DNA of 64,000 nt, taken from positions 124,001 through 188,000 of the IMG/VR virus record IMGVR_UViG_3300042465_005589; one strand, written 5' to 3'. The position numbers and the translations under genes are program-made. Positions 3,216 through 39,114 of this stretch are shown here, piece after piece. The notes under the pieces are model-generated. The model was not told the DNA's origin, ran no database searches, and saw nothing but the letters and a program-made list of their open reading frames with translations. Numbering within the stretch: position 1 is the first letter of the stretch; each line of letters opens with the position of its first letter.

Positions 3216-4502
3216 TTAATTACTTAAAGGTGCTTTAATTGTTGGATGTGATTGATAGTTCTCTAACGTAAAATCTCCTATATCATATGTAAATATCCCA
3301 CCACCAATTCTCATTTTGTTATTGGGGTTAATTGTTATATTTGGTAACTCATAAGGTTCTCTTGTTGTATAAGGAATTTTATACGAATCATAATATTCGC
3401 TTAATCCACCGCCAAACGGCATTAATTCATCAACCGCTTTATTATAATTTTCTTCACCCATCGCTTGTTTTAACAATTCTGTTCTTTCTTCGTGAGTATA
3501 TTTTCTTCCAATTTGTTCTTTAGCTGCATCAATATGATTTGAATATAAATGGACATCCCCTAAATTTCCAATCAACTGGTCAGGAACCATATTAACTTCT
3601 TTTGCAATTATCACCAATAACAATCCATATGAAGCAATGTTGAATGGTAAACCTAAGAATGTATCTACTGAACGTTGATTCCACATTAAAGAGATTGCTC
3701 TGGTTGGTATGTTTAATTCATCTAAAACATCAGATGTTATTCTTTTATCAGGAGTCCAATCAAATTTTCTTTCATTTTTTAAAATGAAAATTTCAAATCT
3801 TTGGTCGTAACTTAATTCTCTTGTATAAACTTGAAATCCATAATGACAAGGTGGAAGAACCATTTGGTCTAATTCTCCAACATTCCAAGCATTAACCATT
3901 AATCGTCTTGAGTCTGGGTTTGTTTTAAGGTCGTTGATTAGGTTTTGGATTTGGTCTATTCCATTTTTTAATCGAAATATTTCATTTACTGTGTAACTAC
4001 TTATAAAGTTTTCAATTGTATGCGGCACTAGAATATCTTTACCACCCCAATTTCTCCATTGCTTACCATAAATTGGACCTAACTCACCCCACTTATTAGC
4101 AAACTCATCATCTGTTTTGATTTTGTTAATGAAAATTGTTTGTGTCATAATTTCATCAGAACCAGTTTTAGTTCCGATAAATCCACCATTAACACTTGAA
4201 ATTGGAAACCAATCTGAATTAAATAAATAATTCTTATAAGCATCACCATTCCAAATATGACAATTATTATCAACCAAATACTTAATGTTGGTATCACCTC
4301 GAAGGAACCAAAGAAGTTCTGTGACGATTGATTTCCACGGCATCTTTTTGGTTGTAAGTAATGGGAATCCTTCTGACATTTTATGTCTGATTTGTCTTCC
4401 AAATACTGATATTGTCCCCGTCCCGGTTCTGTCTTTCTTTTCTATCCCGTTATCCAAGATATCTTGGAGTAAGTCTGTGTATGTTTTGTCTAATTTATTC
4501 AT
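3216..4502 (-). CDS. thyA: thymidylate synthase with insertions
   Basis: DRTGTGT, FPLLTTKK, ELLWFL, GPIYGKQWR, SRR, PPCHYGFQ, NQRSVDTFLGLPFNIASY, YQSHPTIKAPLSN. Confidence 0.97.
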   Translation of the reverse strand: MNKLDKTYTDLLQDILDNGIEKKDRTGTGTISVFGRQIRHKMSEGFPLLTTKKMPWKSIVTELLWFLRGDTNIKYLVDNNCHIWNGDAYKNYLFNSDWFPISSVNGGFIGTKTGSDEIMTQTIFINKIKTDDEFANKWGELGPIYGKQWRNWGGKDILVPHTIENFISSYTVNEIFRLKNGIDQIQNLINDLKTNPDSRRLMVNAWNVGELDQMVLPPCHYGFQVYTRELSYDQRFEIFILKNERKFDWTPDKRITSDVLDELNIPTRAISLMWNQRSVDTFLGLPFNIASYGLLLVIIAKEVNMVPDQLIGNLGDVHLYSNHIDAAKEQIGRKYTHEERTELLKQAMGEENYNKAVDELMPFGGGLSEYYDSYKIPYTTREPYELPNITINPNNKMRIGGGIFTYDIGDFTLENYQSHPTIKAPLSN

Positions 4503-5307: not shown

Positions 5308-5803
5308 CCAATTCTTTTTCTCTACCTTCTTCAACTTTTTTATCAATATAATTTCTAAGGTCTTCCATAGATTGTAAGAACCCCAATCTCAACCGGTGGA
5401 ACTCCTCATCTTTGATTTCATCCCAATTGGAATAATTCTCAAAACAATAATCAAAACCTTCTTCATCCATTCTATATTGAACGGATTCCCAAAGTTCCAA
5501 ATCATCTTCCTCATCAATTTCTAAAGAAGTTAATCCCAAGAAACTTAATAATTTATCCGGTTTTGGTCTTGCGTTCTCGTGTTCATTTGGAATGGTGTAT
5601 GTTCTACCATAACTTGTTGTTAAAGATTTACCACCATTCATAATGTAGATGATACCTTTTGTATTGGTCATCTCAATTATCTCGTGTTGGTCATCCACAA
5701 TTACGTAATCAGAGACACCAATTTTGTATGCTCTGAATGTATCCCCTTCAAAATTTAGTAACCCTAAATGGGGTTTTCTGTTTTTATTCTCGTATTTCGC
5801 CAT
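5297..5803 (-). CDS. hypothetical protein
   Basis: 168-aa ORF, acidic C-terminal half. Confidence 0.75.
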   Translation of the reverse strand: MAKYENKNRKPHLGLLNFEGDTFRAYKIGVSDYVIVDDQHEIIEMTNTKGIIYIMNGGKSLTTSYGRTYTIPNEHENARPKPDKLLSFLGLTSLEIDEEDDLELWESVQYRMDEEGFDYCFENYSNWDEIKDEEFHRLRLGFLQSMEDLRNYIDKKVEEGREKELDGE

Positions 5804-5981
5804 TTGTGTGTTTTATTATTAATCTGTTTATTTTTCCTATTTTATTAAAACTATCCGCCCATTCTGCGTGGGTCTTTGGCTCACCAAAAACATCCAAATA
5901 TATTTCTTTGGACAAAGATAAGGTTTTAGAATAAGATTTCCAATTACTTTCTAATTTTTTATCCATTTGTGTGTAAATCAT
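5784..5981 (-). CDS. hypothetical protein
   Basis: MIYTQMDKKL...; the ATG coincides with the truncated end of the repeat array. Confidence 0.6.
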   Translation of the reverse strand: MIYTQMDKKLESNWKSYSKTLSLSKEIYLDVFGEPKTHAEWADSFNKIGKINRLIIKHTNGEIRE

Positions 5982-6693
5982 AGTGTTCCTCCACCTGTTC
6001 TTGTATACGCCAACCAAACTCCTGTATTGATGTTACACCCATTTTGTAGTGTTCCTCCACCTTAAATGGTAAATCATATTTAAAAAATAGTGTTGATGTT
6101 ACCCCCACTTTGTAGTGTTCCTCCACCGTGTGGTTCCAACATTTCCTGGATTCAATGGTTGTTGTTACCCCCACTTTGTAATGTTCCTCCACCCCATTGA
6201 TATAACCATACATACTGCCTGAAGTTGATATTACCCCCACTTTGTAGTGTTCCTCCACCTCCAAAGAAGCTTCTTTAATAAGTAATTCTGTTGATGTTAC
6301 CCCCACTTTGTAGTGTTCCTCCACCCAATGGAGATTGTGGTCCGCCTTGGCAATAGTTGATGTTACCCCCACTTTGTAGTGTTCCTCCACCCTTGGGGTA
6401 AGATAGTTGTTCTCAACCAACGTTGATGTTACCCCCACTTTGTAGTGTTCCTCCACCCATATCTTTGTGATGTCCTTAATTTGTTGGTTAGACATACTAA
6501 AATAGGATTCAAAAAACTTCCATATTTCTCTATAACTCACATAAACATACCCATTTTTTTTATTGTGTTGCAAGATACATCTCCCATCTTTCATATGAAA
6601 GATATAATCAGGGTATTCTTTCATAATGAATGGTTCCATAGGGTTAAAATTCGCATTCAACCACTTGATACAAAGTTTTTCTAATTTAGTCAT
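5959..6693 (-). CDS. repeat-spacer protein: ~80-aa family domain followed by 7 units of VEEHYKVGVTST + 10 variable residues
   Basis: Likely start MTKLEKL at 6693. The N-terminal domain resembles many paralogs in the window and the frame stays open through all spacers. Confidence 0.85.
   Translation of the reverse strand: MTKLEKLCIKWLNANFNPMEPFIMKEYPDYIFHMKDGRCILQHNKKNGYVYVSYREIWKFFESYFSMSNQQIKDITKIWVEEHYKVGVTSTLVENNYLTPRVEEHYKVGVTSTIAKADHNLHWVEEHYKVGVTSTELLIKEASLEVEEHYKVGVISTSGSMYGYINGVEEHYKVGVTTTIESRKCWNHTVEEHYKVGVTSTLFFKYDLPFKVEEHYKMGVTSIQEFGWRIQEQVEEHYDLHTNG
5981..6457 (+). repeat. 36-nt direct repeats with unique 30-nt spacers, period exactly 66 nt
   Basis: Consensus GTTGATGTTACCCCCACTTTGTAGTGTTCCTCCACC at 6026 (3 mismatches), 6092 (0), 6158 (2), 6224 (1), 6290 (0), 6356 (0), 6422 (0); 15-nt partial at 5981. 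Confidence 0.98.
5981..6457 (+). CRISPR. putative cas-less CRISPR-like mini-array embedded antisense in a CDS
   Basis: 36+30 geometry as in Bacteroidota II-C/VI-B arrays, GTTG start, 7 unrelated spacers, polarised decay. Against: no cas genes in window, a weak repeat hairpin, and full in-frame coding. Confidence 0.4.
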
Positions 6694-6877
6694 TACTCTC
6701 TTTATAAATTTTATAATCAAAATACCAGGGACTTTGTTCCCCCTCATTTTCGTTTTTAACAATTTCTTCGGCAGCAGCCTTAGCCTCCTCGTAACTATAA
6801 TACGATTCCATAAATTGACGAAAATCCACATCAATAAATGGTTCCCGGTGACTATTTCACCAAACTATAATATACAT
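6686..6877 (-). pseudogene. 63-codon ORF interrupted by an in-frame TGA at codon 7
   Basis: MYIIVW*NSHREPFIDVDFRQFMESYYSYEEAKAAAEEIVKNENEGKQSPWYFDYKIYKESND; overlaps both neighbours like a coupled gene. Confidence 0.5.
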
Positions 6878-7425
6878 AATTTTCTTTTTGGTGTTGGTTC
6901 CCAATATGGGTCATCAAAATCAGGGGGATTATTTGGAGTATACTCCATTCCGGTTTCATAGTTTTTTGCTAACCATAAATCATATCGTCTAATATATGAT
7001 AATTCCTCACAACAATTCTCACCCCACTTTTGGTAGAACTCATCATCAGTTAATAACATATGAACGAATTGGTTTTTACCCCATATTACGTCCGGGTCAG
7101 CATCCGGGTCAGGTGCATCCAAAAATTTATGAAATAACCTATCAATCGTATTCATCGGAATGATATCAGGATTCGGTTCACCACCTCGTAATTGATTTAG
7201 AATCTCTTGGTTAATTTCTTTTTGAACTTCTTTGAAAATTTCCGACGTTAACTCATCGTGTACTTTTTGTTTTTGAATTTCTCTCTCAAAAGTTTCCGGA
7301 GTTAATTGATGTAATGAATCCATTTTGAAATGTTGGGTCGGTATTGTGAAAACAGTGTAACCTTCCGTTGGATTACCTTTGATTGTAATTCCGTCCTTTA
7401 TGTATTCGTAAATTGTGTTATCCAT
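6865..7425 (-). CDS. hypothetical protein
   Basis: 186-aa ORF. Confidence 0.8.
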   Translation of the reverse strand: MDNTIYEYIKDGITIKGNPTEGYTVFTIPTQHFKMDSLHQLTPETFEREIQKQKVHDELTSEIFKEVQKEINQEILNQLRGGEPNPDIIPMNTIDRLFHKFLDAPDPDADPDVIWGKNQFVHMLLTDDEFYQKWGENCCEELSYIRRYDLWLAKNYETGMEYTPNNPPDFDDPYWEPTPKRKLCIL

Positions 7426-7828
7426 TATTTGAAACCCTTTCTCTCAATTCTGTTGAACTATATCCGTGTGTTCTTTTATTGTAATGATATTCCATATCTA
7501 AATAACTTCCGGTAAAATCTCTACCTTTATACTCATCACCTAAAATTCTAATGTCAATTTCATAGTTCTGTAATATAGTATCCAACTCATATTCAGTTGT
7601 GTATGGAATAATCTCATCCACATATTTAACCGCCGATAATTGAACCCATCTTTCATAAAACGATTGGATTGGTTGATTTTTAGTCGGTCTATCTATTGTT
7701 GGGTTAACCTGTAACGCAACAATTAAATAATTACAAACCGATTTTGCTTCTTTCAACATTAAGATGTGACCTGCATGAAGTAAGTCAAAAGTACTTGCCG
7801 TTATTCCTCTTTTAATTTTCTTTCCCAT
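7418..7828 (-). CDS. glycerol-3-phosphate cytidylyltransferase-like (TagD family)
   Basis: ASTFDLLHAGH (HxGH), LSAVKYVDEII, GDEY, RTHGYSSTELR. Confidence 0.9.
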   Translation of the reverse strand: MGKKIKRGITASTFDLLHAGHILMLKEAKSVCNYLIVALQVNPTIDRPTKNQPIQSFYERWVQLSAVKYVDEIIPYTTEYELDTILQNYEIDIRILGDEYKGRDFTGSYLDMEYHYNKRTHGYSSTELRERVSNNG

Positions 7829-7831
7829 TTC

Positions 7832-8281
7832 TTATATTTTATTCATCCACAAGTAATATTCCGTAGTATTTGAAGACCCGACTGAGATGTCCACAAATCT
7901 TGTTCCGACAATTTGACCTGACGTTATATTGTAATCGTTTATATTTCCACTTAAATTACCCCAAGGCGTATAGTTTAATGTTAAATTATAACCTGACCCT
8001 GTAAGATATAAACTATAGGTGGTTTGATAGTTATTGTACTTATATGTTGTTGGTGTCAGAAAACGAATTGTATCGTTTTTTGGGAGTATTTGTCCCATCT
8101 GTCCAATTCTATAATTTGTAACAACCCACGTTTGACCAACTAAACTTTGATTTGTTGTTCCAGTACCGTTTGGTGGTGGAACAATAATAATATCCCCACT
8201 ATGTTCGTTTGGACCATTTGGTAATTCTTGAACATAACACGACGATAAAATTAAACACAATAATAATATTAACTTTTTCAT
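7832..8281 (-). CDS. putative lipoprotein
   Basis: Signal peptide with lipobox LILSSC. Confidence 0.75.
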   Translation of the reverse strand: MKKLILLLCLILSSCYVQELPNGPNEHSGDIIIVPPPNGTGTTNQSLVGQTWVVTNYRIGQMGQILPKNDTIRFLTPTTYKYNNYQTTYSLYLTGSGYNLTLNYTPWGNLSGNINDYNITSGQIVGTRFVDISVGSSNTTEYYLWMNKI

Positions 8282-8533: not shown

Positions 8534-8732
8534 ATTCTTGTTGTTTTTCAAATTGTTTTCTACCAATACATTTAGTTTCTTCTTTTGTTTCCCACAGACC
8601 ACCTCTTTTCTCCGGAGGTATCATATGACAATTGTGGGACTTGTCGTGTTTCATTGAATGTCCGACAATCATATCATTAAAATGATTTCTAACTATCCAG
8701 GGACATTCTTTGCAAGATTTTTTGTTATCCAT
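8511..8732 (-). CDS. small Cys/His-rich protein
   Basis: CKECPW...HNCH...C. Confidence 0.7.
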   Translation of the reverse strand: MDNKKSCKECPWIVRNHFNDMIVGHSMKHDKSHNCHMIPPEKRGGLWETKEETKCIGRKQFEKQQEYESNIIV

Positions 8733-9112
8733 TTGTTATCAGAATTTAATAAATACTCACCAACAAAATCTTTTCCTCGTGTCCATTCGTTGGGTGCGAT
8801 AAGTGATAATGTTAATTCTCCAGCAAAGTTATATAAAAAATATGACTTTCCAACTATTGGTTCAAAAGAAATTTTAGATTCCCACACCATTATTGATGTG
8901 TTGTATTCGTCATACATCTTTTCTATTCTTTCTTTTATCTCTTGATGCTCTCTATTAAAGACATCCATCATCTTTTTTGATGACTGTTCCCTAAACAACG
9001 GAACATTAGGTAAGTCAAATCCTTGACTACCCGCACTTGTGGGGTATGACTTTAATTTTGAGTCATAACCATCTTTCTCACTCCAAACAACTAAATCCGG
9101 TTTCTTCTCCAT
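8693..9112 (-). CDS. DUF2452-like protein
   Basis: SFEPIVGKSYFLY...LSLIAPNEW...YLLNSDNKW resembles Bacteroidota DUF2452. Confidence 0.7.
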   Translation of the reverse strand: MEKKPDLVVWSEKDGYDSKLKSYPTSAGSQGFDLPNVPLFREQSSKKMMDVFNREHQEIKERIEKMYDEYNTSIMVWESKISFEPIVGKSYFLYNFAGELTLSLIAPNEWTRGKDFVGEYLLNSDNKWITKNLAKNVPG

Positions 9113-22640: not shown

Positions 22641-22999
22641 TCCTCAACAAATTCCTCAATTAATTTATTCAAACTTATTCCCAACATATCAAGACCAAGT
22701 ATTTTTAAAAAATTATTTTCGCTAATTTTACGATTGTGAGATTCACTTAAAACTAAGGTACCATATTCTTTACCTTGAGGGTGAAGATAATAATTATTTC
22801 CATTAACCTTAAACAAATACATTGGACCATAATTATTAAGTAACCACCTAAACTCATCTCTACCATCAGTAAACAAGTTTTGACCTTTAGGACCTAATTC
22901 AATCCAATTTGTAATTATTTCAATATTGTCGGATAAGTTATAACCCAATATATTATTGATTAACCCTTTTAATCTGTTTTCTGTTATTATTATTTTCAT
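22637..22999 (-). CDS. leader-bearing protein, paralog of 27999-28373
   Basis: MKIIITENRL...NNILGYNLSDNIEIITN...LLNNYGPMYL. Confidence 0.8.
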   Translation of the reverse strand: MKIIITENRLKGLINNILGYNLSDNIEIITNWIELGPKGQNLFTDGRDEFRWLLNNYGPMYLFKVNGNNYYLHPQGKEYGTLVLSESHNRKISENNFLKILGLDMLGISLNKLIEEFVEE

Positions 23000-23340
23000 A
23001 ATTCTTCCTCCACTCTTTTCCACCACCAGGGGTTATCGTCTCTCGCCGAAACATTATTTGAATGTAAACCATATTCCTCCAATAACCATTTTTTTAATAT
23101 TGTTTGAACATCAGAAAAATCTAATCCAAATATTTTGGTTAACCCACTCCATATATTAAACACATCAACATACACATTAGTGTTTGTTAAATGATAGTCA
23201 ATCATTACCTTACCGTCTTTAACATAGAAAAGACGAGTTGGGTTGGATTCGCTTGTAACCGAAGGTAACCCTCCAAATTTATCGGTCAACCATTTTAGGA
23301 CCAATCTATGTAATCTATCTTCAGTAATTATCATTCTCAT
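22996..23340 (-). CDS. leader-bearing family domain with a single spacer-like tail
   Basis: Ends KKWLLEEYGLHSNNV-SARDDNPWWWKR-VEEEL. Confidence 0.8.
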   Translation of the reverse strand: MRMIITEDRLHRLVLKWLTDKFGGLPSVTSESNPTRLFYVKDGKVMIDYHLTNTNVYVDVFNIWSGLTKIFGLDFSDVQTILKKWLLEEYGLHSNNVSARDDNPWWWKRVEEEL

Positions 23341-23341
23341 A

Positions 23342-23659
23342 TTAATTTAATCTTCTAGTAAAAAAAGTTGATTTTAATGCTGACGGTTCATTAAATTTAA
23401 TTGAAACATATTCTTTACAGATATCCACCAAATCAGGTATAGACATCCCTAACATATTTTTAGCGGTATAAAAATCATCGTAGTCAAATCGTATTGATTC
23501 TTGTTTGGTATCATATTCAAAAGCGGTACGACCATTATCATCCATATATTCATATAGAACGTGAGGATACCCCATACGTATCGGTCGTCTCCCGTGTTTC
23601 TCATAACCCCTAAAGGTCATATCAAAATATTTAAAGATGAGTTCTTTCTTTCTGTTCAT
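23342..23659 (-). CDS. member of the expanded paralog family
   Basis: KKELIFKYFD...YMDDNGRTAFEYD. Confidence 0.75.
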   Translation of the reverse strand: MNRKKELIFKYFDMTFRGYEKHGRRPIRMGYPHVLYEYMDDNGRTAFEYDTKQESIRFDYDDFYTAKNMLGMSIPDLVDICKEYVSIKFNEPSALKSTFFTRRLN

Positions 23660-36503: not shown

Positions 36504-36837
36504 AATCCTCATTGTGATACCCCATCAAATATACTTCTTCGGGTTCTAACCTTATTCTATCTTTAAACCACCAAAAAATAACTCTTTGTAGTTCTTCCTC
36601 ACCAAATGAGAAAACCGATAGAGGTAACCAAAAATCCCTATAAACATATAATCCCCCATTATTCTCTAACCATTTCAATATAATTTTACCATCACTATCT
36701 TTGAATAACACTCGGTGATTACTAAACACTGAATTTACATTCATATCTTTATCTTCACGTGTTAATTTACTCAAGACATTATCTAATACCTTATAGGATA
36801 ATTGTCTTCTTTTATCTTCTGTAAGAAGTACTCTCAT
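36502..36837 (-). CDS. leader-bearing family-domain protein
   Basis: MRVLLTEDK; FKDSDGKII...FWWFKDRIRLEP. Confidence 0.8.
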   Translation of the reverse strand: MRVLLTEDKRRQLSYKVLDNVLSKLTREDKDMNVNSVFSNHRVLFKDSDGKIILKWLENNGGLYVYRDFWLPLSVFSFGEEELQRVIFWWFKDRIRLEPEEVYLMGYHNED

Positions 36838-38733: not shown

Positions 38734-39063
38734 TTAGTTTAATATATGTTTATTTACGTGATGAACTTTTTCAACCGGTAACTCAAAAAACTCCGAGAAC
38801 CATTTACCAACTAACCTTTTTACTTCAGGTGGAGTATAACTAAAATATGTAATTGGTTTTACCACATCTTCACAAATATATAACGTTTTATTTCTATCAC
38901 CATAAAGCATAATAACACCATCACCATTACGAAATTCGATTTTTTTTTGTTCTCCAACACTATCTGTCATATAACTAACATCTTCATACATATTAGAGAA
39001 GGCTTTATCTAATTCTTTTTTAGCTAATTGGTCTCTTCGGCTTTCTATTATCAAAATCTTCAT
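38734..39063 (-). CDS. leader-bearing family-domain protein
   Basis: Start MKILIIESR; GKWFSEFFELPVEKV. Confidence 0.8.
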   Translation of the reverse strand: MKILIIESRRDQLAKKELDKAFSNMYEDVSYMTDSVGEQKKIEFRNGDGVIMLYGDRNKTLYICEDVVKPITYFSYTPPEVKRLVGKWFSEFFELPVEKVHHVNKHILN

Positions 39064-39114
39064 ATTAATAAATATCATATAAATTAAAAACCCCCACGTT
39101 TGTGAGGGTTATTA

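What the first reader, a model, noticed from the sequence alone, without database searches (positions are those of the whole stretch)
5981..6457. Repeat geometry, sequence and polarity resemble Bacteroidota type VI-B/II-C arrays
Seen: decay is polarised. The three repeats next to the N-terminal domain are perfect, mismatches accumulate toward 6026, and the last copy is a 15-nt fragment, as in leader-end acquisition. Known: VI-B arrays use 36-nt GTTG...CAAC repeats with 30-nt spacers, and in Flavobacterium a VI-B array can be extended in trans by II-C Cas1-Cas2. Against the Riemerella Cas13b repeat as I recall it (GTTGGGACTGCTCTCACTTTGAAGGGTATTCACAAC) I count 21 of 36 identities, including CACTTTG. 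The terminal and inner stems are broken and only CACT-TTGT-AGTG remains. Inference: host Cas1-Cas2 may write into this phage gene, or the antisense RNA may act as a Cas13b decoy or guide.
Basis: partly seen in the sequence, partly recalled or inferred. Interest (0 to 1): 0.7.

Follow-up and report, generated by a model that had tools for sequence, protein, structure and literature searches.

The report
CRISPR-like spacer array inside phage gene
A lake jumbo phage (probably of Bacteroidota) carries, inside a translated accessory gene, a real 36-nt-repeat / 30-nt-spacer array that grows at one end, varies between strains and holds at least one spacer copied from another phage gene, so it behaves like a CRISPR array with no cas genes nearby; this combination appears undescribed.

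Summary
Window 5981-6457 holds seven 36-nt repeats at an exact 66-nt period, a 15-nt stub and seven unrelated 30-nt spacers.

The array lies in frame in a minus-strand gene (5959-6693): a conserved 79-aa domain followed by 22-aa units. More than 200 homologues in lake metagenomes differ in length by steps of 22 aa.

Several features are set at the DNA level:
- The unit boundary is one base out of codon phase.
- Spacers look random. They are either near-identical or unrelated to each other, and they show no codon periodicity.
- The units nearest the domain are the most canonical and the most strain-specific.

One spacer is a 28/30 copy of a segment of a 2,308-aa phage gene, read in another frame. 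The newest window spacer matches a foreign RNA contig.

Only frame-keeping insertions persist: 3 of 57 spacers carry in-frame stops, against 33-53% in the other frames. A likely reason is that the gene's stop codon overlaps the next gene's start.

The phage has no Cas1, Cas2 or reverse transcriptase. The repeat is absent from 185,579 reference genomes. Its likeness to Bacteroidota VI-B/II-C repeats is weak (16-21 of 36).

My best reading is CRISPR-type integration with repeat duplication, probably by a host Cas1-Cas2. The identity of the writer is inferred, not shown. The decoy or guide RNA idea is untested.

The parts
5959..6693 (-). Array-bearing gene (244 aa plus stop): N-terminal domain followed by 7.5 units of 22 aa.
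   Evidence: ORF. More than 200 homologues have lengths of 134/156/178/200/222/244 aa. Some co-occurring lake strains lack the gene precisely (joints 5969/5970 to 6698/6699).
6457..6693 (-). N-terminal domain (codons 1-79). It acts as the 'leader' of the array.
   Evidence: pN/pS is 0.2. AlphaFold2 pLDDT is about 80-89, with a helix / beta-sheet / two-helix layout. No known fold matches. It belongs to a family of 924 clusters, mostly about 100-125 aa without an array.
6448..6465 (-). Leader-repeat junction AAGATATGG|GTGGAGGAA (K77 I78 W79 | V80 E81 E82).
   Evidence: There is no synonymous change in 22 distinct sequences, while codons 73-76 vary in 25-45% of pairs. The repeat starts at the last base of the Trp79 codon.
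6422..6457 (-). Repeat 1, next to the domain; perfect. Its VEEHY codons are part of the domain's last helix.
6392..6421 (-). Spacer 1, the newest (peptide LVENNYLTPR).
   Evidence: Spacer 1 plus the adjacent 2 nt of the next repeat (window 6390-6421) matches 30/32 in a 415-nt contig of freshwater RNA run X24, which has unrelated flanks. A 22-nt core of the spacer and both contig flanks are absent from IMG/VR, and the match plus flanks is absent from 5 related phage genomes.
6356..6391 (-). Repeat 2, perfect.
6326..6355 (-). Spacer 2 (IAKADHNLHW).
   Evidence: No match to a 22-nt core of it in IMG/VR apart from the array itself.
6290..6325 (-). Repeat 3, perfect.
6260..6289 (-). Spacer 3 (ELLIKEASLE).
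6224..6259 (-). Repeat 4, 1 mismatch.
6194..6223 (-). Spacer 4 (SGSMYGYING). In the same lake samples other spacers occupy this position.
   Evidence: At least three alternative continuations follow 6193 in runs X1, X2 and X13. One 30-nt alternative has 17-29% of the depth.
6158..6193 (-). Repeat 5, 2 private mismatches.
   Evidence: Contigs show this repeat type on both sides of an extra 30-nt spacer (joint 6193 to 6158).
6128..6157 (-). Spacer 5 (IESRKCWNHT).
6092..6127 (-). Repeat 6, perfect.
6062..6091 (-). Spacer 6 (LFFKYDLPFK), shared with homologue P0001.
6026..6061 (-). Repeat 7, 3 mismatches.
5996..6025 (-). Spacer 7, the oldest (QEFGWRIQEQ). It and its close variants are the most widely shared spacers of the family.
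   Evidence: QEFGWRLQKE occurs 37 times, QEFGWRLQKQ 13 times and QEFGWRIQEQ 6 times.
5981..5995 (-). Terminal 15-nt partial repeat (VEEHY) that runs into the tail DLHTNG and the stop.
5784..5966 (-). Downstream 60-aa gene. Its ATG (5964-5966) overlaps the array gene's stop (5959-5961) within ATGGATAA.
   Evidence: The same overlap is seen in most related loci.
22999..23340 (-). Array-less paralogue of the N-terminal domain.
   Evidence: hmmsearch E = 1.4e-15
23345..23659 (-). Array-less paralogue.
   Evidence: jackhmmer E = 3.8e-28
36505..36837 (-). Array-less paralogue.
38737..39108 (-). Array-less paralogue (stop-to-stop ORF).
   Evidence: jackhmmer E = 2.7e-25

Best explanation
The region is a CRISPR-like repeat-spacer array embedded in frame in a dispensable phage gene.

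**How it grows.** The 36-nt repeat is the 3' end of the sequence that codes for a small conserved domain. It runs from the last base of the Trp79 codon to the second base of a Thr codon. New 66-bp units are added mainly next to that domain. Each unit is a fresh copy of the 36-nt segment plus about 30 nt of DNA captured from elsewhere. Older units drift, decay, and are lost or reshuffled by recombination between repeats.

**What selection does.** Selection does not act on the spacer peptides. It only removes insertions that close the reading frame. The likely reasons are that the gene's stop overlaps the start of the next gene (translational coupling and polarity) and that a conserved C-terminal tail must be reached.

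**Shown versus inferred.**
- Shown: the anatomy, the polarity, the family-wide geometry, the frame filter, and one spacer copied from another gene.
- Inferred: the writer works by staggered cuts 36 bp apart with a length ruler, as Cas1-Cas2 does. The most likely candidate is the II-C-type Cas1-Cas2 of a Bacteroidota host, which makes 29-30-nt spacers and is known to service a foreign 36-bp-repeat array in trans. On this reading the phage locus is an off-target or 'neo-CRISPR' site, or possibly a selected decoy.
For: **Anatomy and chance**

**Nucleotide-level unit**
- The base before every repeat is always G, whatever amino acid results.
- The third base of the last Thr/Pro codon is free.
- The same register holds in distant relatives whose repeats differ (L076, L077).
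- Repeat GC is 45%, against 25-29% for the domain.
- pN/pS is 0.52 in the repeats and 0.2 in the domain.

**Spacers look like random DNA**
- 148 of 190 have no relative beyond the shuffle level, while 41 have a twin at 8-9 of 10 residues. There is no continuum between the two groups.
- Entropy is near maximal at every position, and composition is closer to six-frame noise than to the proteome.
- There is no codon periodicity or positional base bias. A equals T and C equals G, and GC is 36.7% against 31% for the phage.

**Frame filter**
- Lengths are 30 nt (53), 29 nt (2) and 33 nt (2).
- In-frame stops occur in 3 of 57 spacers, against 33-53% in the other frames.
- The three broken arrays (L037, L043, L049) still carry perfect repeats after the break.

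**Polarity**
- 44% of proximal spacers are unique, against 18% of the most distal.
- Unshared spacers number 4933 proximal, 400 internal and 1934 distal.
- Repeat decay increases with index.
- L015 equals L018 plus one proximal unit.
- Lake populations share a distal part and differ proximally.

**Capture**
- L049 spacer 1 matches 28/30 to residues about 1747-1757 of a 2,308-aa gene conserved in four related phages. It is in the sense orientation but is read in another frame in the array.
- Window spacer 1 matches a foreign RNA contig.

**Host and precedent**
- The genome has no Shine-Dalgarno signal.
- The geometry matches real Bacteroidia arrays.
- Nivala 2018, cited in PMC6698737, describes non-canonical integration that creates new arrays.

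**Junction**
- The junction is invariant at synonymous sites.
Against: - No integrase was identified. The phage has no Cas1, Cas2 or reverse transcriptase.
- The host is unknown, so whether it has II-C/VI-B could not be checked.
- The repeat core is in none of 185,579 species genomes. Its likeness to real VI-B/II-C repeats is weak and depends on orientation.
- Only 1-2 of about 250 spacers have a traceable source. None of the spacers of the five phages with long genomes matches its own genome, although Cas1-Cas2 in infected cells usually samples the phage.
- Polarity is imperfect, with many distal unshared spacers and 60 non-colinear pairs.
- The repeat codes for the conserved C-terminal motif of a protein family, and the distal units are conserved as protein. 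A protein-level role is therefore not excluded.
- The flanks of the RNA-contig match resemble each other, so that source may itself be repetitive.
Confidence: 0.45

Rival explanations
1. It is an ordinary protein tandem repeat (a 'false CRISPR'). A 22-aa module with a conserved 12-aa scaffold and a hypervariable 10-aa linker evolves by unequal crossing-over, concerted evolution of the scaffold, and fast mutation or diversifying selection of the linker.
For: - The array is in frame with a period divisible by 3, and 54 of 57 spacers are stop-free.
- The domain is under purifying selection.
- The repeat is the C-terminal motif of a large protein family.
- Distal units are conserved as protein (NQxxFYxxxD, VEELY..TNG).
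- Recombination between arrays is evident.
- False CRISPRs inside genes are common (PMC5294841).
Against: - Spacer similarity is bimodal with no intermediates.
- Spacers have random composition and no codon periodicity.
- The boundary is out of codon phase and carries an invariant G.
- One spacer is a 28/30 copy of an unrelated gene read in another frame.
- Arrays with broken frames keep perfect repeats.
- The array region is predicted to be disordered even with an in-register alignment.
Confidence: 0.2
2. DNA is captured and the repeat duplicated as in the best explanation, but the writer is a phage-encoded or general, non-Cas mechanism. Examples are an unrecognised integrase or nuclease, or microhomology-primed template switching during phage recombination-dependent replication.
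For: - The geometry and register are conserved across distant phage lineages whose repeats differ. That is easier to explain if the machinery travels with the phage.
- No host array with this repeat was found.
- Both traced sources are followed by GG, as is the repeat start. This is possible microhomology.
- A jumbo phage carries hundreds of unknown genes.
Against: - No recombinase lies near the gene.
- No mechanism other than Cas1-Cas2 is known to give a 36-bp duplication with 30-bp inserts.
- The 36/29-30 values coincide exactly with those of Bacteroidota arrays (PMC5006608).
Confidence: 0.2
3. The array's main role is as RNA. It would be either a repeat mimic that soaks up Cas13b, Cas9 or processing factors (Racr-like) or a phage mini-array that supplies guides.
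For: - The termini are weakly like VI-B repeats. In the leader-to-array sense orientation the starts are GGTGG against GTTGG and the ends are ..CAAC in both. Identities are 16-21 of 36.
- The lack of self-matching spacers in five phages would fit purging of self-targeting guides.
- Racrs and viral mini-arrays are known (PMC10651486, PMC7099407).
Against: - No Rfam CRISPR family matches.
- The stems are not kept, and the fold energy is within shuffle range.
- Repeat sequences drift between lineages.
- The array lies inside a translated ORF and has no promoter of its own shown.
- There are no stranded RNA data.
- Racr candidates were found for all types except VI.
Confidence: 0.1
4. It is a multi-core peptide precursor (RiPP-like), in which conserved recognition sequences flank hypervariable 10-aa cores that are cut out and modified.
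For: The architecture (leader domain plus repeated conserved and hypervariable cassettes, with nucleotide-identical flanks) recalls cyanobactin-type precursors (own knowledge).
Against: - No protease or modifying enzyme lies nearby.
- The cores show no compositional constraint at all.
- Stop-containing and frameshifted units occur.
- One core is out-of-frame DNA from another gene.
Confidence: 0.03

Closest known systems
Bacteroidota type VI-B / II-C CRISPR arrays (Riemerella CRISPR2; Flavobacterium columnare; PMC5006608, PMC8092290)
   Same: - Repeats are 36 nt and spacers 29-30 nt.
- One end is variable and lies next to a conserved 'leader'.
- Distal repeats are degenerate.
[quoted passage not shown]
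- The array can be extended without its own cas1-cas2.
- Some spacers are copied from phage DNA.
   Different: - It lies in frame inside a translated phage gene, and the 'leader' is a protein domain.
- No cas genes are in the genome.
- Repeat identity to real repeats is only 16-21 of 36, and the hairpin is lost.
- Spacers are filtered for open frame.
- Repeat sequence varies between lineages while the geometry stays fixed.
Neo-CRISPR loci from non-canonical (off-target) Cas1-Cas2 integration (Nivala et al. 2018, cited in PMC6698737)
   Same: A non-CRISPR sequence becomes a repeat through ruler-length duplication at each insertion, and an array grows without adjacent cas genes.
   Different: - That work was done in E. 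coli chromosomes and plasmids.
- Here the array is on a virulent-type jumbo phage, is maintained across many lineages, and is under a reading-frame constraint.
- The involvement of Cas1-Cas2 is not shown here.
Viral solitary repeat units / RNA anti-CRISPRs and viral mini-arrays (PMC10651486, PMC7099407, PMC11656645)
   Same: Phage-borne CRISPR-like repeats occur without cas genes.
   Different: - Those elements are non-coding, close mimics of host repeats, with 0-2 spacers.
- None was found for type VI.
- This array has up to 8 units, is translated, and only faintly resembles known repeats.
False CRISPRs: tandem repeats in protein genes (PMC5294841)
   Same: A repeat-spacer look inside an ORF.
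   Different: False CRISPRs are defined by a lack of spacer diversity. Here the spacers are as diverse as random sequence, and one has an external source.
Hypervariable segments between conserved motifs in phage adhesins (T4-type gp38) and multi-core RiPP precursors (own knowledge)
   Same: Conserved motifs bracket hypervariable stretches, and recombination occurs at the conserved parts.
   Different: In those proteins the variable parts are constrained, functional peptides in a structured protein. Here they are unconstrained, and the region is predicted to be disordered.

Membership tests
CRISPR array (type VI-B / II-C of Bacteroidota) | Regular direct repeats of about 36 nt separated by unique spacers of about 30 nt | tested here: met
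   real arrays for comparison and PMC5006608
CRISPR array (type VI-B / II-C of Bacteroidota) | Repeat sequence belongs to the family (GTTG...CAAC ends, conserved stems) | tested here: inconclusive
   Identities are 16-21 of 36 to four independent real repeats, while real repeats share 20-25 of 36 with each other. The score is at about the 99.98th percentile of genome windows. Only one GTTG/CAAC end is present. The fold is not better than shuffles. Rfam gives nothing.
CRISPR array (type VI-B / II-C of Bacteroidota) | cas genes in the same genome, or an identical repeat in a cas-bearing host | tested here: not met
   No Cas1 or Cas2 in the 318-kb phage. The 24-nt repeat core is absent from 185,579 species genomes. 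The host itself is unknown.
CRISPR array (type VI-B / II-C of Bacteroidota) | Spacers copied from other DNA (protospacers) | tested here: met
   Met for L049 spacer 1 (28/30) and probably for window spacer 1 (30/32 including 2 adjacent repeat bases). No source was found for the rest.
CRISPR array (type VI-B / II-C of Bacteroidota) | Polarised addition next to a leader | tested here: met
   The bias is about 2.5:1, not absolute.
CRISPR array (type VI-B / II-C of Bacteroidota) | Non-coding; transcribed and processed into crRNA bound by an effector | tested here: not met
   The array lies in frame in a conserved ORF. Processing and binding are not testable with these tools.
False CRISPR / protein tandem repeat | 'Spacers' related to each other or of low diversity | tested here: not met
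   148 of 190 spacers have no relative beyond the shuffle level.
False CRISPR / protein tandem repeat | Period a multiple of 3, inside an expressed ORF | tested here: met
Racr / solitary repeat unit | Close mimic of the host's CRISPR repeat, non-coding, with its own promoter | tested here: inconclusive
   The host is unknown, likeness to known repeats is weak, the element is coding, and no promoter was tested.
Neo-CRISPR (off-target Cas1-Cas2 integration) | Ruler-length duplication of a non-CRISPR target at each insertion of a canonical-length spacer | tested here: met
   A 36-nt duplicated unit is taken from coding sequence, with 30-nt inserts and a constant register across lineages. A variant shows the same private repeat type on both sides of an extra spacer.
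Neo-CRISPR (off-target Cas1-Cas2 integration) | Dependence on Cas1-Cas2 | not testable with these tools
   Needs the host, genetics or biochemistry.
Diversity-generating retroelement | Reverse transcriptase plus a template repeat, with A-specific changes | tested here: not met
   No RVT_1 in the genome, and the spacers are unrelated to each other.
RiPP multi-core precursor | Adjacent modifying or processing enzymes | tested here: not met
   The neighbours are thymidylate synthase, a cytidylyltransferase, DUF2452 and unknowns.

The most novel reading that the evidence does not exclude
These phages keep a translated 'landing pad' that attracts a spacer integrase. One version is that it works as a sink or decoy for host CRISPR adaptation, and possibly feeds harmless or self-serving guides to Cas13b or Cas9; that would be the first type VI/II-C-related viral repeat mimic. 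The other version is that it is written by a Cas-independent, phage-borne spacer-capture system, which would be a new way to record foreign DNA inside a gene.
Probability: 0.25. Interest if true: 0.95.

Novelty: new variant of a known kind. Interest (0 to 1): 0.8.

Why it matters
**Significance.** If host Cas1-Cas2 writes into a phage gene, this is natural off-target or in-trans adaptation onto a virus. A phage genome would then carry a readable record of the DNA present in its past hosts. It would also be a possible anti-adaptation decoy, a kind of counter-defence not yet described.

If the writer is not Cas1-Cas2, it is a new DNA-capture mechanism.

**Practical points**
- It is a clean natural case of random peptides being inserted into a protein under a frame-only filter.
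- CRISPR finders and gene callers will both mis-annotate it.
- The spacers could identify the unknown hosts of a widespread group of lake jumbo phages.

Tried and rejected
**Searches that found nothing**
- Near, distant and protein searches of the isolated-phage collection.
- Pfam: no hit. PHROGs: only weak hits to families of unknown function..
- Rfam at E <= 10: no CRISPR family.
- Fold searches (PDB Foldseek, VIA-wide, BFVD, AFDB clusters) and the protein atlas: only uncharacterised phage proteins or Z <= 4.5.
- The second AlphaFold2 run, with an in-register alignment, still left the array unstructured.
- Exact scans of IMG/VR with 22-nt cores of window spacers 1 and 2, and with both flanks of the RNA contig: only the array itself, or nothing.

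**Spacer source searches**
- All nucleotide spacers and 204 peptide spacers against five related phage genomes gave one hit only.

**Comparator repeat**
- A scan of 185,579 genomes for the 18 positions shared with the Riemerella repeat gave three single-copy chance hits. I first read this as 'comparator not real'. One search corrected that: the species representative evidently carries the other repeat variant.

**Mechanisms considered and rejected**
- DGR: no reverse transcriptase.
- RiPP precursor: no enzymes nearby.
- A T4-type prohead-protease cleavage motif (V-E-E) in each repeat: an idea only, not testable here, and the gene sits among early-type genes.

**Other**
- The 12-nt inverted repeat 5912-5923 / 6457-6468 looks like chance.
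- Not attempted: spacer searches against large samples of Bacteroidota genomes. The chance of including the true host species was low and the outputs are very large.
Full report
**1. What is there**

Window 6026-6457 holds seven copies of a 36-nt repeat at an exact 66-nt period. They are separated by 30-nt stretches that are unrelated to each other, and a 15-nt stub lies at 5981-5995. Four copies are perfect (6092, 6290, 6356, 6422). The copies at 6224, 6158 and 6026 have 1, 2 and 3 mismatches. No such match occurs in shuffles.

The window is part of a 318,164-bp virus record (31% GC, rated complete). The array occurs once in it.

**2. It is inside a gene**

The array lies in frame in a minus-strand ORF (5959-6693, 244 aa). 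The ORF is a 79-aa N-terminal domain followed by 22-aa units, each VEEHYKVGVTST plus ten variable residues.

A word-indexed search found more than 200 homologues, all from metagenomes. Their lengths are quantised: 134, 156, 178, 200, 222 and 244 aa.

The domain is under purifying selection (pN/pS 0.2) and folds confidently (pLDDT about 80-89). Its last helix runs into the VEEHY of repeat 1. The array itself is predicted to be disordered, even with an in-register alignment. No solved or named fold matches.

The domain belongs to a large family of small phage proteins: 924 clusters, mostly 100-125 aa. Five array-less paralogues sit in this same genome. All end in a W..EE.Y.L-type motif, so the repeat is the duplicated C-terminal motif of that family.

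**3. The unit is defined in DNA, not in protein**

In every array the repeat starts one base before a codon boundary. That base is always G, and at repeat 1 it is the last base of the Trp79 codon. The repeat ends after the second base of the twelfth codon.

Distant relatives with quite different repeats show the same register and the same 36+30 geometry. Examples are GTTGGAAGAGACCGACAAATTGAGGGAGTATACACC in L076 and GGTAGAGGAACAATTCAAATCAGAGGTAACAACAAC in L077.

Repeats are GC-rich (45%) in a 31% GC genome. Their pN/pS is 0.52, well above the domain's 0.2.

The nine bases on either side of the domain-repeat junction show no synonymous change in 22 distinct sequences, while nearby codons vary freely.

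**4. The spacers look like random DNA that passed a frame filter**

- Of 190 distinct ten-residue spacers, 41 have a near-identical twin (8-9 of 10). Nearly all the others are no more alike than shuffles, and there are no intermediates.
- Every position has near-maximal entropy. Composition fits six-frame noise better than the proteome.
- At the DNA level I used 57 distinct spacers collected by a DNA pattern, so the set is unbiased with respect to ORFs. These show no codon periodicity and no positional bias. A equals T and C equals G, and GC is 36.7%.
- Lengths are 30 nt (53), 29 nt (2) and 33 nt (2).
- In-frame stops occur in 3 of 57 spacers, against 33-53% in the other five frames and about 48% for random 30-mers of this genome.
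- Three arrays (L037, L043, L049) are broken by a 29-nt spacer or a stop, yet they keep perfect repeats beyond the break.

A likely reason for the filter is that the gene's stop overlaps the ATG of the next gene (ATGGATAA) in a tight operon. This is an inference from known translational coupling and polarity.

**5. Polarity and turnover**

- Spacers next to the domain are unique in 44% of cases. The most distal are unique in 18%, and the same old spacers recur across many arrays (QEFGWRLQKE and its variants).
- In pairs of arrays that share spacers, unshared ones lie proximal 4933 times, between shared ones 400 times and distal 1934 times. Order is colinear in 301 pairs and not in 60. Addition is therefore biased to one end, with recombination on top.
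- Repeat decay grows with distance from the domain.
- L015 equals L018 plus one proximal unit.
- Flanking genes are 85-98% identical between phages whose arrays share almost nothing.
- The phage is present in at least 23 lake metagenomes. Within single samples, contigs share the distal part up to repeat 5 and continue with at least four different spacers. One variant has repeat-5-type sequence on both sides of an extra 30-nt spacer, at 17-29% of depth. Some strains lack the whole gene precisely.
- These are assembler contigs. They show that variants are present, not how frequent they are.

**6. Where spacers come from**

No spacer of the window matches its own genome. No match was found in isolated phages. 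Exact scans of IMG/VR with 22-nt cores of window spacers 1 and 2 found only the array itself.

Against five related genomes (1.28 Mb), one spacer stands far above the shuffle range. L049 spacer 1 matches 28/30 to a segment of a 2,308-aa gene that is conserved in four of the phages. The match is in the sense orientation, but the array reads it in a different frame (NKVVGFNVDF in the source, IRLSGLMLNL in the array). That is a nucleotide-level copy of exactly spacer length.

The newest window spacer plus two bases matches 30/32 inside a 415-nt contig of a freshwater metatranscriptome. Its flanks are unrelated to the array. The source is unknown, and its flanks resemble each other, so I treat this case as probable only.

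In both cases the source continues with GG, as does the repeat.

The 204 peptide spacers gave nothing more in the five genomes.

**7. Relation to CRISPR**

The phage lacks Shine-Dalgarno sites and has A-rich upstream regions. By established knowledge this points to a Bacteroidota host, and aquatic jumbo phages of Flavobacteriia are known (PMC12619734).

The membership tests mostly fail, however:
- The phage has no Cas1, Cas2 or reverse transcriptase.
- The repeat core is absent from 185,579 species genomes.
- No Rfam CRISPR family matches.
- Identity to four independent real repeats is 16-21 of 36, against 20-25 among real ones. The 21/36 value needs the repeat flipped relative to the leader.
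- The fold is no better than shuffles.

The array works like a CRISPR array at the acquisition level, but I do not file it as a VI-B/II-C array.

**8. Mechanism**

The data fit insertion of roughly 30-bp fragments with duplication of a fixed 36-bp target. That is the chemistry of Cas1-Cas2 with its ruler.

Two precedents matter. The II-C integrase of F. columnare extends a foreign 36-bp-repeat array in trans despite different leader and repeat sequences, and in that system VI-B spacers came about evenly from the phage and from the host's own genome (PMC8092290). Non-canonical integration can also create new arrays (Nivala 2018, via PMC6698737).

I therefore favour host Cas1-Cas2 writing into this phage gene, at confidence 0.45 for the whole statement. 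The identity of the writer is its weakest link.

The near-absence of phage-derived spacers argues either for sampling of host DNA or for purging of self-matching spacers. I could test neither.

The rivals are:
- an ordinary hypervariable protein repeat (0.2);
- a phage-borne non-Cas writer (0.2);
- an RNA decoy or guide role (0.1, and not exclusive of the others);
- a RiPP-like precursor (0.03).

**9. Novelty**

I found no description of in-frame, translated repeat-spacer arrays in phage genes. Viral repeat mimics were reported for every CRISPR type except VI.

I rate this a new variant of a known kind. It has a substantial chance of being more than that.

Noticed in passing
window 5959-6697 (joints 5969/5970 to 6698/6699): In several lake runs, including an RNA run, related strains lack the whole array gene. 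The cut runs precisely from just upstream of its ATG to just upstream of the next gene's ATG. In one strain 145 other letters replace it. The gene therefore behaves as a dispensable cassette.
   Followed up: partly
whole genome G000 (window = 124001-188000): There is no Shine-Dalgarno signal: 4% of 264 long ORFs, equal to background. Positions -14 to -10 are A-rich. Codon GC3 is 21%. This is typical of Bacteroidota and their phages.
   Followed up: partly
window 3216-4502 (-): The thymidylate synthase is 428 aa. The Pfam match comes in two stretches, so the protein carries a sizeable insertion or extension compared with the 266-position model.
   Followed up: no
window 22999-23659, 36505-36837, 38737-39108; genome 287240-287551: Five array-less paralogues of the N-terminal domain are present, two of them adjacent. 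The family has 924 clusters in metagenomes, and some members carry 2-5 tandem copies of the domain (for example 760 aa with 5 stretches).
   Followed up: partly
L043, L037, L049 (metagenome contigs): These arrays contain a 29-nt spacer or an in-frame stop, yet the repeats after the break are perfect. They could be recent insertions not yet purged, or assembly errors. They are among the arrays with the most uniform repeats.
   Followed up: partly
RNA run X24, contig matching window 6390-6421: The two 30-nt flanks of the spacer-1 match are about 80% alike, with indels. One frame stays open throughout and contains the spacer peptide LVENNYLTPR. The source may itself be a repeat-bearing gene or another kind of array.
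   Followed up: partly
L128 (G000 264970-271871) and L129 (G406): The gene that supplied L049 spacer 1 is the largest in these phages (about 2,300 aa). It has no PHROG match at E <= 1e-5.
   Followed up: partly
window 1-64000: The 64-kb window has no tRNA gene. Most ORFs of 250 aa or more, and the genes around the array, are on the minus strand, often with overlapping stop and start codons.
   Followed up: no
window 8693-9112 (-) and 7418-7828 (-): A DUF2452 protein and a small cytidylyltransferase-like protein lie upstream in the same gene run. Between them is a lipoprotein-like ORF (7832-8281) with a signal peptide ending in a cysteine.
   Followed up: no
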